Below are positions 622 to 3,600 of a stretch of 64,000 nt of DNA, piece after piece. The position numbers were made by a program, and so were the translations under genes. The DNA lies in assembly GCA_964199315.1 (NCBI GenBank), contig OZ116699.1, forward strand, positions 13,082,001 to 13,146,000. Reading direction: 5' to 3'. Numbering within the stretch: position 1 is the first letter of the stretch; every line of letters starts with the position of its first letter. The notes under the pieces were generated by a model that saw only the letters and a list, made by a program, of their open reading frames with translations, made no database searches and had not been told where the DNA came from. This DNA comes from Orbicella franksi. Taxonomy: Eukaryota.

Positions 622-3600
622 GTAAGTTACAGATTGGAACCAGGGGAGAACGGGCTAGGCTTATATAACTATGACAATAGAAACTTTCATTAGAAGTGAA
701 GAAACAGAAACTATTGCGGAACTTTATCACCAGTTTAAGTGAACAAAAATAACGAATCGATGATTAATTAGATTGCTGAATTTTCCTCTGTTTTCTTCCG
801 GATGAGAGCCAAGACCTGACGGTTACAACTGACGAATAATTCGGTATTGGAGTGTTAGGGTAACGTTCATTAATACTTTGGAAGTGGCAAGGCTATATGT
901 GATACCGACTGGATAAACCGATACGGTGTACTTAACTTGAGACTAGGACAGAGAACAAACTTAAATGGAAGCTGATCTATATGTTTGTCAACAGGAAACA
1001 AAGTAAAGCTCTCCTCTGATGACAGCAGACTGACATTTGACGACAAGTCCGAATCACGTGGTCTTTTCACAGTTGTCCAAGCTGACGACAAGAAGATTAT
1101 TAAAGCAAACAGCGCCGGATTGCTGGGTCAAGGTGTCCTCATTGTTCGTGTTCACAACGTTTACAATGTCCGCGTCACAGTAAATGTGGTGGGTTACTCT
1201 TCGCTACAGTTAACAGCTGTTCCTTATCCAGTCATTGAAGGATCGAATGCCACTTTGACGTCGTTGAAGCGTATAGGAAGTCTCCATGGAAACGTCCAGT
1301 TGGCTGCTCTCAAGCTATGCCTCGTTTTGACGGATAAGTCCACCACCGATGTTTCCACGATGACGTCGACATCATTTCGTGTCGTAAGCAATGACGTAGG
1401 AGTTAAAGTTTCCATGGATTCTATTCCTAAGAACGTGCTGTTTATAGACAGGACGAGCACAAGCGGGTACATGAGCTTTCGTGGGCAGTTCTCCGGTAAA
1501 GAGTCGGGGAATCTTGTTCTCGAAGTTTCAACGGAAGTAATAACAGTTAATGAAATCCTTGCCGTGGAAATAATCGGGCTCAGGAATCAAACTCTTTTGG
1601 GTCCAGTGTTGTCCACGCAGGCCCAGGTTCAAGTAGACTTTGTTATGAATGATAGCTCTGTGCTTAGAGTGCAAAATTTCTCCGCAATCTCTGGACTTGT
1701 AGCATTTAAAATCAGTCACGAAAAAGCAGCTTCGGTTGACCGCGTGACGGGGGTTGTTATGCTGCTGTCAGACTATCATGACTTGGTGACCGTGACAGTC
1801 ACTCCGTTTCAGGGTCTTGGAAAACCAAAGCATGTGCAATTGTATTGTAACACAGTCCCACCAGTGGGTGGTGTTGACATTGGACAGGAGTACGGCCCAG
1901 CAGTACCAGCATTAATAGCTAACCAGAGAGTTACCATTCCTTTACGCGTGAATCCTGGCAAATCAAAACTTCTTGCCTTTGATTTGAAGATTTTGTACGA
2001 TGATCGCCAAGTTCGGTTTGTTGAACTGAAAAGAAGCAGTGCCTACTCCCACACTAAAGGACAACTGCATTTAGCTGATGTGACAAATCCCGATGATGCA
2101 AGTCCGCATGTTGCTGACCTGGTTTTCGATTCATTAGTCGACGGCGTGCTTAGCATCCAAGCCTCGGTGAACATGTTAATTGACAAAAGGCTGGGATTCA
2201 TTGGGAACTTTGCACCAGCTGTGACGTCATGCAATGCGCTACCGCTGGGCGATGCTAACGCGGATTGTGTGTTCGATATCCGGGACGCTGCTTTCACAAT
2301 GGCATATAGTCTAGCACAGGAAAAGAACTTCGTCGGTGAATTTGAGCAAACGATGTCAAAAAGCACGACTGATACAATGGTAAGTATCTTATATTAGTAA
2401 AAAAAAAATGTCAGAAGATGTGAAAAGAAAGTACTTTAGAAGCTTAGATAGCATATAGGAAAGTCCGGGGTCTACTGACATACATATAACAGTTTATTTT
2501 GATTCGAATTCGTTTATGTTTTTTTTGATCCAAAATAGCAGCCAGGAAGGTGTTATTCGATTGTATACATGTGTCTATGAATTTTAAGACTCTCTGTGTC
2601 CCTTAGTTCTCTTAGAGGCACCATGATAAAATTAGAAATAGTTAACAAGCATTTTCTTTTTGCTCAAATCCTTTTGTTTTCTTTCTTTTTTTTCTTAAAG
2701 CAACAAATTATGGACTTCAATCTCAATGGAGTCGTAGAACGAAATGACGCCTATCTGCTAGCTCGTGCGAATATGGACATGGTGCGATTCGTTCGTTCCC
2801 TTCACGTGAACTTCCCTGATCACCAGAATAAATCAACAGATTGCGCACTTGAAGTAACAGCCAAGCTAAGCACAAGAGATGGAAAGATGGAAACAGATTC
2901 AAACACGAAAGTGTACTTCGAATTTGCCAGCAGGGAGAAGGTCTTGAGCTTGCAACTTATGGGCACCTCATTCGACTCCGGAGAGCTGATAACAACGTAC
3001 GATAACCTGAACGAATTATTTGGAGGCATCGTGAAGGCGGAGAGTCGAGACGAAAGTTTTCATGTGATGGCTAAAAACTCCAAGATAGAAATTTCAAACA
3101 TGGGTTTGTCAATGATTCAAGTTACCCAGGATGCTCTGCGCCAGGCAGTAGTGACTCCGCTGTTCAAGTTCTCGCGCGTTCCAATGTTCTCTACAACACT
3201 CCAAGTCCAGTTGTCACCAAATGCTGATATGGTGATAAGGAGTGGCCATTCATCTCAGTTGACGGTCAACGTTACAGAGTCCTATGCAACATGTCAAGAT
3301 CCACCTGATACGAAGAACGTCATGTTTGTCTTTGAAAACGATTTTACCGAAGTCGAAGGCAACGAAGACTCTTTTGCAAAAACTATTATTACGGACTTAA
3401 CGGCGAGATTCCCATGGGCGAAGATTGGTAACATGAGATTTGCACGCGGAAGCATACTGGTTTATTTTGACATCACAACCCAGACATCCCGGATGGACAA
3501 AACTCTCGTTGCATTATGGGATATGTTGAAGTCAGGGTATACTGTGCGTGTCAACAGCAATGAGTATCAAGCGCAAAAAGTCATGCGCGTAGACGGGGAG

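What the first reader, a model, noticed from the sequence alone, without database searches (positions are those of the whole stretch)
1897..2770. Cohesin and dockerin in tandem in one chain; asymmetric dockerin split by an intron
Seen: a cohesin-like segment (~1897-2205) is followed directly by two 12-residue Ca-loops, [12 protein letters not shown] and [13 protein letters not shown] phase-0 intron (2380-2700) separates the loops. Two Cys residues (TSC, ADC) flank loop 1. Known: in cellulosomal dockerins, loop positions 10/11 set cohesin specificity, and symmetric repeats allow a dual binding mode. Here they are I/R versus R/N. Inference: a single binding mode, used either for cis/trans self-polymerisation between cells or for capture of microbial cohesin/dockerin proteins (host-microbe recognition). 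The spliceosomal intron shows the module is host-encoded rather than contamination.
Basis: partly seen in the sequence, partly recalled or inferred. Interest (0 to 1): 0.75.

Follow-up and report, generated by a model that had tools for sequence, protein, structure and literature searches.

The report
Coral cadherin's cohesin-dockerin stalk module
A giant coral cell-surface cadherin carries, close to the membrane, a real but divergent copy of the cohesin-dockerin pair that bacteria use as a calcium-dependent protein clasp; the pair belongs to an old, already named animal-lineage cadherin group ("coherins"), and what it binds is still unknown.

Summary
Window 1843-2223 encodes a compact cohesin β-sandwich. 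In Foldseek its AF2 model (pLDDT 92) matches solved cohesins in all of its top 35 hits. Window 2224-2379 plus 2701-2793 encodes a dockerin with two intact 12-residue Ca loops. The 321-nt GT..AG phase-0 intron (2380-2700) is absent from RNA contigs of three runs, which also join these exons to the cadherin exon.

The window's own sequences fall just below Pfam's cut-offs (Cohesin 15.9 bits, Dockerin_1 19.9 bits). Relatives pass them clearly (Cohesin 84 bits), and a family dockerin profile finds solved dockerins ahead of calmodulin.

This is not a one-off. Among the 150 best relatives (giant cadherins with TMEM132-type Ig domains), 177 of 181 dockerins sit directly after a cohesin. The loop-1 Cys and the asymmetry between the two repeats are family-wide. 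The coral genome holds at least four such units.

My preferred mechanism is inferred, not shown. The dockerin packs on its own cohesin and forms a rigid Ca-dependent stalk element.

The scan noted a similar tandem pair on another piece of this genome (s1-214160).

Verdict: a new member of a known kind, of moderate interest.

The parts
3..621 (+). Exon with the last two cadherin repeats of the same gene. The gene starts upstream of the window.
   Evidence: Pfam Cadherin E 7.7e-30. RNA contigs join 620 to 994 (table 5).
622..994 (+). Intron, GT..AG, phase 1
   Evidence: The joint 'skips 373' appears in all four RNA runs (table 5).
997..1842 (+). 282 aa of three Ig-like domains, a diverged TMEM132-type Ig triple, directly before the cohesin
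   Evidence: hhalign of the family alignment against the Ig_TMEM132_4th-6th family alignment: probability 98%, E 1.6e-13, 210 columns. The two alignments share no segments.
1843..2223 (+). Compact cohesin module: a β-sandwich of 8-9 strands, with the family motif [14 protein letters not shown] at its start
   Evidence: AF2 pLDDT 92.1, pTM 0.84. Foldseek against the PDB: top 35 hits are all cohesins, best E 1.6e-5. Pfam Cohesin scores 15.9 bits, E 0.015, below the 24.1 cut-off. The 91%-identical orthologue P0001 scores 20.1 bits and the relative P0032 scores 84.4 bits.
2224..2250 (+). Short linker holding the conserved Cys (TSC, 2230-2232) seven residues before loop 1
   Evidence: This Cys is conserved in 53 of 57 family dockerins. 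A disulfide to the loop-1 Cys is inferred, not shown.
2251..2286 (+). Dockerin Ca loop 1, [12 protein letters not shown]. Ligand positions 1, 3, 5, 9 and 12 are intact. Cys sits at position 6.
   Evidence: Family column counts: D1 57/57, C6 57/57, F8 53/57, D12 57/57.
2287..2379 (+). Dockerin helix 1 and the long inter-repeat linker, up to the exon end
   Evidence: AF2 helices at model residues 140-154 and 160-168. The Pfam Dockerin_1 alignment spans this stretch.
2380..2700 (+). Spliceosomal intron, GT..AG, phase 0, 321 nt, inside the dockerin
   Evidence: Sequence. RNA contigs X1 record 3, X4 record 18 and X5 record 20 skip it (table 8). The same-genome paralogue on C6 and the C3 units have no intron here.
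2701..2793 (+). Dockerin repeat 2: QQIM, Ca loop 2 [12 protein letters not shown] (2713-2748) and helix 3
   Evidence: Family columns D1 and D12 are invariant, G6 is 40/57, and positions 10/11 have 3.4-3.5 bits of entropy. The own-genome profile match continues here at profile positions 241-291.
2794..4462 (+). Rest of exon 3. It holds a post-dockerin β domain with a conserved Cys (2842-2844), an SEA-like module (ARGSILVYF at 3442-3468), a TM span (3661-3729) and the start of the cytoplasmic tail. The exon ends at 4462 (cac|gtaagt).
Evidence: Translation. The conserved Cys is C227 in alignment A2, present in at least 90% of rows. All four RNA runs leave the window sequence at 4462 (table 7).

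Best explanation
IDENTITY (well supported). The stretch is a genuine, divergent cohesin-dockerin didomain of the coherin / TMEM132-related lineage of giant cadherins. It sits in the membrane-proximal stalk of a giant coral surface protein. The domain order is cadherin repeats, three TMEM132-type Ig domains, cohesin, dockerin, β domain, SEA, TM, tail. The window's unit is the 'short' type. Its cohesin is trimmed to about 125 aa and only about 9 residues separate it from the dockerin.

MECHANISM (inferred). The dockerin binds two Ca2+ ions through its intact loops. A disulfide between the Cys seven residues upstream and the Cys at loop position 6 probably staples it. It packs against its own neighbouring cohesin in cis. 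Together they form one rigid, Ca-dependent, mechanically strong element of the stalk just outside the SEA module.

In 'long'-type paralogues the same clasp would hold together the two halves left after convertase cleavage at R-x-[KR]-R motifs in the cohesin-dockerin linker.

The hypervariable face of repeat 2 (positions 10/11) stays free and could bind a further, unknown partner.
For: Identity:
- Cadherin exon on the same transcript.
- Cohesin fold in the window's own model.
- Cohesin fold in the paralogue-type model: Z 11-12, rmsd 2.0-2.5 Å over 107-110 residues against type I cohesins, including 1OHZ_A.
- The spliced peptide matches Dockerin_1 over both repeats, E 8.7e-4.
- The family dockerin profile hits solved dockerins first (4fl4_A 6e-7, 1ohz_B 1.9e-6). 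Calmodulin appears only at 1e-3 or weaker.
- Relatives carry Cadherin, Ig_TMEM132_4th/5th/6th, Cohesin (84 bits) and Dockerin_1.
- Cadherins with cohesin domains are the published coherins (PMC6030884, PMC8164589).

Cis packing:
- The AF2 tandem model of P0003:361-590 has pTM 0.86 with pLDDT 86-93 through the linker. The window's own model has pTM 0.84. By my reckoning from the pTM formula, two domains of about 125 and 90 residues with no fixed orientation would give about 0.5.
- With family HMMs, 177 of 181 dockerins lie directly after a cohesin, and 3 more sit at truncated N-ends. 26 cohesins lack a dockerin. The dockerin therefore behaves as an appendage of its cohesin, not as a free tag.
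- The coral genome shows four dockerins and four cohesins, all in tandem.
- Repeat 1 is conserved (C6, F8, hydrophobic position 10), which fits a constant partner. Repeat 2 is variable at 10/11.

Furin-like motifs: 59 of 81 units carry them, none of the 7 short-type units does, and both C3 units of this genome do.
Against: - No coordinates or PAE were available, so the cis interface is inferred from pTM alone. Its geometry, canonical 8-3-6-5 face or not, is unknown.
- AF2 can place homo-oligomeric (trans) contacts inside one chain.
- The two-chain test gave no answer and counts neither way.
- Prokaryotic cohesin-dockerin tandems in AFDB align to the model only with rmsd near 20 Å, so no independent model shares the arrangement.
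- The window's own cohesin and dockerin score below Pfam's curated cut-offs.
- The cohesin is trimmed and may have lost its binding function.
- The window's unit has no convertase motif, so the cleave-and-hold part does not apply to it directly.
Confidence: 0.5

Rival explanations
1. Intermolecular pairing. The dockerin of one molecule binds the cohesin of another coherin-type protein. The partner could be the same protein or the C6 or C3 paralogues. Binding could be lateral on one membrane or head-to-tail in chains.
For: - A 1:1 tandem of complementary modules is what a daisy chain needs.
- At least four units in at least three genes exist in this genome.
- 26 family cohesins lack their own dockerin and could accept one in trans.
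- Positions 10/11 of repeat 2 are hypervariable, as expected of a specificity surface.
- From my own knowledge, not checked here: an archaeal protein with both modules (Archaeoglobus fulgidus, cohesin 2XDH) was reported to bind its own dockerin type.
Against: - The unit is membrane-proximal, behind several thousand residues of ectodomain. That is a poor position for cell-cell contact, though not for lateral contact.
- The high pTM of the single-chain models suggests the two modules already occupy each other.
- No binding data exist. Complex prediction gave no answer.
Confidence: 0.25
2. Structural relic. The pair is inherited from coherin ancestors and now serves only as a folded Ca-binding spacer, with no cohesin-dockerin recognition at all.
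For: - The window's cohesin is shortened. About 108 residues align to cohesins of 135-150 residues.
- It scores below Pfam's cut-off.
- The short type has lost the linker and two of the four Cys of the long type.
Against: - Ca-ligand positions, the Cys pair and the cohesin N-terminal motif are conserved between paralogues only 26-35% identical.
- The dockerin is retained after 177 of 220 cohesins.
- The gene is expressed and correctly spliced.
Confidence: 0.17
3. Host-microbe recognition. The animal modules capture dockerin- or cohesin-bearing proteins of bacteria or archaea associated with the coral.
For: - Cohesin/dockerin proteins are widespread in prokaryotes, including tandem forms.
- Corals live with dense microbial communities (general knowledge).
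Against: - Nothing here points to it.
- The unit is buried next to the membrane.
- The family is shared by many giant cadherins, with the pair always in tandem.
- The literature places cohesin-bearing cadherins before the origin of animals.
- Identity to bacterial modules is only 11-22%.
Confidence: 0.04
4. Chance resemblance: a generic β-sandwich followed by two ordinary EF-hand-like loops, not cohesin or dockerin homologues.
For: - The window's own Pfam scores are below the gathering thresholds.
- phmmer of the window's piece against PDB sequences finds nothing.
Against: - The top 35 Foldseek hits are all cohesins.
- The family profile finds dockerins over both repeats, ahead of calmodulin.
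- Relatives pass both Pfam cut-offs.
Confidence: 0.02

Closest known systems
Coherin family of cadherins (Abedin & King 2008; Nichols et al. 2012; known to me only as cited in PMC6030884 and PMC8164589)
   Same: Cadherin repeats and a bacterial-type cohesin domain in one transmembrane protein. Relatives also carry TMEM132-type Ig domains.
   Different: The cited papers place coherins in choanoflagellates and sponges, whereas this one is in a reef coral. It is joined to a fibrocystin-L-like N-terminal part according to earlier scan notes that I did not check. The texts I could read do not mention the obligate dockerin after the cohesin. I did not test orthology to the named coherins.
TMEM132 family (Sanchez-Pulido & Ponting 2018, PMC6030884)
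   Same: A cohesin-like domain and three tandem bacterial-type Ig domains in a single-pass adhesion-type protein. The window's 282 aa before the cohesin match the Ig triple (hhalign 98%).
   Different: TMEM132 has the order conserved region - cohesin - Ig x3 and has no dockerin; the paper states none is detectable in vertebrates. Here the order is Ig x3 - cohesin - dockerin. The cohesin matches Pfam's classical Cohesin model and no TMEM132 model.
Type I cohesin-dockerin complexes of bacterial cellulosomes (e.g. 1OHZ, 2CCL, 2VN5)
   Same: The same two folds. The cohesin jelly-roll aligns with Z 11.2 to 1OHZ_A. The dockerin has two 12-residue Ca loops, each followed by a helix, and Asp at position 12.
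   Different: - The modules sit on one chain in fixed tandem, not on scaffoldin and enzyme.
- The repeats are not symmetric.
- Cys replaces Gly at loop-1 position 6.
- The inter-repeat linker is about 11 residues longer than in the aligned solved dockerin 4fl4_A.
- No glycoside hydrolases are involved.
- The host is eukaryotic and the gene has introns.
- Sequence identity is only 11-22%.
Non-cellulosomal prokaryotic proteins with cohesin directly followed by dockerin (ESM Atlas and AFDB clusters; surveyed by Peer et al. 2009, which I could not read here)
   Same: The same cohesin-then-dockerin order within about 200-290 residues, often at the C-terminus of larger surface proteins.
   Different: They are prokaryotic and their function is also unknown. 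The predicted domain arrangement differs (rmsd about 20 Å). They lack the Cys pair, the cadherin context and the Ig triple.
Juxtamembrane cleave-and-hold modules: SEA, GAIN, and the Notch S1/heterodimerisation domain (general knowledge)
   Same: The position just outside the membrane of a giant adhesion-type receptor. In the long-type relatives, a processing motif lies inside a module whose two halves could stay bound without a covalent link.
   Different: The folds are unrelated. Cleavage and holding are hypothetical here. The window's unit lacks the basic motif and already has an SEA-like module downstream.

Membership tests
Cohesin (Pfam PF00963) | Score at or above the curated gathering cut-off of 24.1 bits | tested here: not met
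   Window 1861-2220 scores 15.9 bits, E 0.015, profile 12-58. The whole exon gave no hit. Orthologue P0001 scores 20.1 bits. Relatives P0002, P0044 and P0032 score 24.9, 34.6 and 84.4 bits.
Cohesin (Pfam PF00963) | Jelly-roll β-sandwich of the cohesin type | tested here: met
   For the window's own AF2 model (pLDDT 92.1), the top 35 Foldseek PDB hits are all cohesins, E from 1.6e-5. The paralogue-type model gives Z 11-12, rmsd 2.0-2.5 Å, 107-110 residues aligned.
Cohesin (Pfam PF00963) | Binds a dockerin | tested here: inconclusive
   Complex prediction of P0003 cohesin against its dockerin gave no answer, score 0.04. The high single-chain pTM (0.84-0.86) is only indirect.
Dockerin type I (Pfam PF00404) | Score at or above the curated gathering cut-off of 22.9 bits | tested here: not met
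   The spliced peptide scores 19.9 bits, E 8.7e-4, profile 1-54 of 57. Relatives P0003, P0147, P0127 and P0032 score 25.0, 24.2, 28.2 and 27.6 bits.
Dockerin type I (Pfam PF00404) | Two repeats, each a 12-residue Ca loop with ligands at positions 1, 3, 5, 9 and 12 followed by a helix | tested here: met
   Loop 1 is [12 protein letters not shown] and loop 2 is [12 protein letters not shown]. Helices follow both loops in the models.
Dockerin type I (Pfam PF00404) | Closer to dockerins than to other EF-hand proteins | tested here: met
   The family profile A3 against PDB sequences puts dockerins on top (6e-7 to 4e-4, with one alignment spanning both repeats). Calmodulins appear at 1.3e-3 or weaker. 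This was tested on the family profile, not on the window's sequence alone.
Dockerin type I (Pfam PF00404) | Near-symmetric repeats that allow a dual binding mode | tested here: not met
   The repeats differ family-wide. C6, F8 and a hydrophobic position 10 mark repeat 1. G6 and variable positions 10/11 mark repeat 2. The binding mode itself cannot be tested here.
Dockerin type I (Pfam PF00404) | Ca2+-dependent folding and binding | not testable with these tools
   This needs ITC, CD or SPR with and without EDTA.
Coherin cadherins | Cadherin repeats plus a cohesin domain in one membrane protein | tested here: met
   Cadherin E 7.7e-30 on the adjoining exon of the same transcript. Cohesin fold. 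TM span at 3661-3729.
Coherin cadherins | Orthology to the named choanoflagellate and sponge coherins | not tested
   The protein libraries gave no names or taxa, and Nichols et al. 2012 is not held.
TMEM132 architecture | Order: conserved region - cohesin - three Ig domains - TM | tested here: not met
   Here the Ig triple precedes the cohesin (hhalign), and a dockerin, absent from TMEM132, follows it.
Cellulosome system | A scaffoldin with several cohesins plus separate dockerin-bearing enzymes | tested here: not met
   Own-genome searches find only tandem units inside cadherin-type genes, with no lone dockerin.

The most novel reading that the evidence does not exclude
The animal-lineage cohesin-dockerin pair is a self-binding mechanical clasp, a new kind of juxtamembrane 'cleave-and-hold' or force-latch module. 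In most family members a convertase cuts the R-x-[KR]-R motifs in the linker, and the Ca-dependent cohesin-dockerin contact alone keeps the giant ectodomain attached. In the window's short-type unit the same clasp works uncut, as a force-sensitive latch in series with the SEA module. On this reading, choanoflagellate and animal adhesion receptors borrowed one of the strongest known protein-protein bonds for mechanical signalling or shedding control.
Probability: 0.2. Interest if true: 0.75.

Novelty: new member of a known kind. Interest (0 to 1): 0.5.

Why it matters
Cohesin-dockerin bonds are among the strongest non-covalent protein bonds measured, and they are textbook bacterial parts. The open literature I could read records cohesin domains in choanoflagellate and sponge cadherins and a cohesin-like domain in human TMEM132. 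It states that no dockerin is detectable in vertebrates (PMC6030884).

This coral gene shows that a cnidarian keeps the full pair, expressed and spliced, next to the membrane of a giant receptor. The family data gathered here give concrete, testable rules:
- the dockerin always follows a cohesin;
- loop 1 has an invariant Cys at position 6;
- convertase-like motifs sit in the linker of most units.

If the pair is a cis clasp, it offers a simple model of how premetazoan and early animal adhesion receptors handle force and shedding. It may also hint at what the orphan cohesin of TMEM132 once bound.

Tried and rejected
- Complex prediction: P0003 cohesin (361-484) against its dockerin (485-575) as two chains gave 'no answer' (score 0.04, mark 0.34). 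It counts neither for nor against binding.
- phmmer of window 1840-2379 against PDB sequences: no hit at E<=10. The single sequence is too divergent, and the profile and fold searches were needed.
- Pfam on the whole exon 2: no hit. The narrower pieces gave sub-threshold hits.
- Naming and taxonomy of relatives: the listing of cluster members and the search for homologous proteins returned no names or taxa. The look-up of encoding contigs gave no DNA for P0127. The taxonomic range of the family was therefore not established here.
- AFDB and ESM Atlas searches for an independent model with the same two-domain arrangement found none. AFDB tandems align with rmsd near 20 Å, and Atlas rows cover the cohesin only.
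- Reading Nichols et al. 2012 (PMC3420208) and Peer et al. 2009 (PMC3035643): neither is held. Whether they already describe the dockerin in coherins, or cnidarian members, is unknown to me.
- Paper searches for dockerin with coral or cnidarian terms found nothing relevant.
- I considered inter-domain covariation (DCA) and dropped it, because about 180 units are too few.
I folded the window's own exon piece and a complete unit of the C6 paralogue type (P0003, 35% identical to the window's unit in alignment A1) instead.
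Full report
**What is in the window**

The first 4.5 kb of the + strand hold the 3' part of a large gene whose start lies upstream. There are three exons: 3-621, 995-2379 and 2701-4462.

- The first exon encodes cadherin repeats (Pfam Cadherin, E 7.7e-30).
- RNA contigs from coral libraries of separate studies join 620 to 994 and run 994-2378 directly into 2700-4462. One 5.5-kb contig (X5 record 20) carries all three exons. 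The same joins appear in X1 record 3 and X4 record 18 (tables 5 and 8).
- The 321-nt intron at 2380-2700 (atg|gtaagt ... ttaaag|caa, phase 0) is therefore real and removed.
- The module lies on the same transcript as the cadherin exon, so it is host-encoded.
- Exon 3 ends at 4462 (cac|gtaagt). All four runs leave the window sequence there.

**Checking the observation**

One correction applies. The second Cys does not flank loop 1. It is loop position 6, where the solved dockerins have Gly.

Taken alone, the window's sequences are borderline by Pfam:
- The spliced dockerin peptide scores 19.9 bits (E 8.7e-4; cut-off 22.9). Its alignment spans profile positions 1-54 of 57, across the splice.
- The cohesin piece scores 15.9 bits (E 0.015; cut-off 24.1).
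- The whole exon gave nothing.
- phmmer against PDB sequences gave nothing.

**Homology settles it**

A full HMMER scan of 1.84 billion representative proteins with exon 2 found 288 relatives at E<=1e-3 and 24 at E<=1e-30. Several relatives pass Pfam's curated cut-offs:
- Cohesin: 24.9 bits in P0002, 34.6 in P0044, 84.4 in P0032.
- Dockerin_1: 25.0 in P0003, 28.2 in P0127, 24.2 in P0147, 27.6 in P0032.

The same proteins carry Cadherin repeats and the Ig_TMEM132_4th, 5th and 6th domains.

A profile of 57 family dockerins, searched against PDB sequences, ranks solved dockerins first. 4fl4_A scores 6e-7 with one alignment over both repeats, and 1ohz_B scores 1.9e-6. Calmodulins appear only at 1.3e-3 or weaker. 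These are therefore not plain EF-hands.

**Fold**

An AF2 model of window 1861-2379, built on a 55-row alignment, has pLDDT 92.1 and pTM 0.84. It shows eight to nine strands followed by two helices. In Foldseek against the PDB its top 35 hits are all cohesins, with E from 1.6e-5.

A model of a complete unit of the C6 paralogue type (P0003:361-590, 35% identical to the window's unit) has pLDDT 92.8 and pTM 0.86. Its cohesin aligns to type I cohesins at Z 11-12, rmsd 2.0-2.5 Å, over 107-110 residues, including 1OHZ_A.

It is not met.

**Context**

The 282 residues between the last cadherin repeat and the cohesin are a diverged copy of the TMEM132-type Ig triple. hhalign gives probability 98% and E 1.6e-13 over 210 columns, and the two family alignments share no segments.

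The pair therefore sits in the membrane-proximal stalk.

Cadherins with cohesin domains were already named coherins. They are said to occur in choanoflagellates and sponges, and the TMEM132 architecture was linked to them (PMC6030884, PMC8164589). The same paper states that dockerin homologues are not detectable in vertebrates. I could not read Nichols et al. 2012 or Peer et al. 2009.

**Family rules found here**

Family HMMs run on the 150 best relatives gave these results:
- There are 220 cohesins and 181 dockerins.
- 177 dockerins lie directly after a cohesin, 3 are at truncated N-ends, and 1 is a fragment.
- 26 cohesins have no dockerin.

Column counts across 57 dockerins:
- In loop 1, Asp at positions 1 and 12 and Cys at 6 are invariant. 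Phe at 8 occurs in 53 of 57, and position 10 is hydrophobic in 53 of 57.
- The Cys seven residues before loop 1 occurs in 53 of 57.
- In loop 2, Gly at 6 occurs in 40 of 57, and positions 10/11 are the most variable (3.4-3.5 bits).

Most units are of a 'long' type. They have a linker of about 70 residues between cohesin and dockerin that carries one or two R-x-[KR]-R motifs (59 of 81 units) and a C..P.C..C motif. The window's unit and seven relatives are a 'short' type without that linker or motif.

The coral's own genome holds at least four units:
- the window's unit;
- a short-type paralogue on C6, inside one open 989-aa exon and so without the intron;
- two long-type units on C3, with GRPRRS/TRTRRS and KRRRRG/RMRRS motifs.

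No lone dockerin or cohesin was detected at this sensitivity.

**How it most likely works**

- Shown: the two folds, the intact Ca-ligand positions, the conserved Cys pair, the obligate tandem order, and expression with splicing.
- Inferred: the dockerin packs on its own cohesin. The evidence is the high pTM of both single-chain models with an ordered linker. By my reckoning from the pTM formula, two unfixed domains of these sizes would give about 0.5. The dockerin also never occurs away from a cohesin.
- I have no coordinates or PAE, so the interface is unknown. AF2 can also fold trans contacts into one chain. The two-chain test returned 'no answer'.
- I put a cis clasp that makes a rigid, Ca-dependent stalk element at about 0.5, counting the secure identity. 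Intermolecular pairing is at about 0.25, a non-binding relic at about 0.17, microbe capture at about 0.04, and chance resemblance at about 0.02.

**Comparison with known systems**

The pair has the folds of type I cellulosomal modules, but it is not a cellulosome. There is no scaffoldin/enzyme split, the repeats are not symmetric, and there is no glycoside hydrolase.

Tandem cohesin-dockerin units also exist in many prokaryotic surface proteins, so 'both modules in one chain' is not new in itself.

By the operational definition (cadherin + cohesin + TM) the gene is a coherin-type cadherin. Orthology to the named coherins was not tested. It does not have the TMEM132 domain order.

**Verdict**

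- This is a new (cnidarian, short-type) member of a known kind.
- The scan had already noted a tandem pair on another piece of this genome (s1-214160).
- Interest is moderate. It rests mainly on the family rules and the testable clasp / cleave-and-hold idea rather than on this copy.

Noticed in passing
Relatives P0005-P0149 (alignment A1/A2 columns between cohesin and dockerin); own genome L001 and L002 (G000:C3:6056183-6057085 and 6065688-6066530, minus strand): In the long type of the unit, the linker of about 70 aa between cohesin and dockerin carries one or two furin-like R-x-[KR]-R motifs (59 of 81 units). A C..P.C..C motif follows. Both C3 units of this coral have two such motifs each. 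None of the 7 short-type relatives examined has one, and the window's own unit, also short type, has none either.
   Followed up: partly
window 997-1842: The 282 aa between the last cadherin repeat and the cohesin are a diverged TMEM132-type triple Ig array (hhalign 98%, E 1.6e-13). Pfam does not detect it in the single sequence.
   Followed up: yes
L003 76-3045, minus strand (G000:C6, about 31274538-31277507): A same-genome paralogue, a near copy of P0009. One open 989-aa exon holds the last cadherin repeat, the Ig triple, a short-type cohesin-dockerin, an SEA-like module, a TM span and a tail. It has no intron in the dockerin.
   Followed up: partly
window 4462-4587: Exon 3 ends at 4462 (cac|gtaagt), and all four RNA runs continue with other sequence there. 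The open frame that runs on to 4587 is intronic read-through, not coding.
   Followed up: yes
window 633-1023 and 2463-2725: Low-depth RNA-library contigs (depth 3-11 against 16-124 for the exons) cover both introns. This is unspliced pre-mRNA or DNA carry-over. I saw no alternative splice form.
   Followed up: no
Relatives, e.g. P0021 (five units), P0028, P0073: 26 family cohesins have no dockerin after them, as in TMEM132. They could be free acceptors for dockerins of other units, or units that lost the dockerin.
   Followed up: no
window 1849-1851 (Cys of YCN) and 2842-2844 (Cys of STDCALEV): A Cys just before the cohesin is the consensus residue in the family, and a Cys just after the dockerin is present in at least 90% of rows (C227 in A2). 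The two bracket the whole didomain. A disulfide closing the pair into a loop is conceivable, but I could not check it without coordinates. P0127 and P0147 lack the first Cys.
   Followed up: no
locus of P0127 (ENA contig of 1.97 Mb; no DNA served): In that unnamed eukaryote the terminal exon with cohesin-dockerin lies about 7 kb downstream of a cadherin exon. A reverse-transcriptase ORF (RVT_1) lies between them, probably a retroelement in the intron.
   Followed up: no
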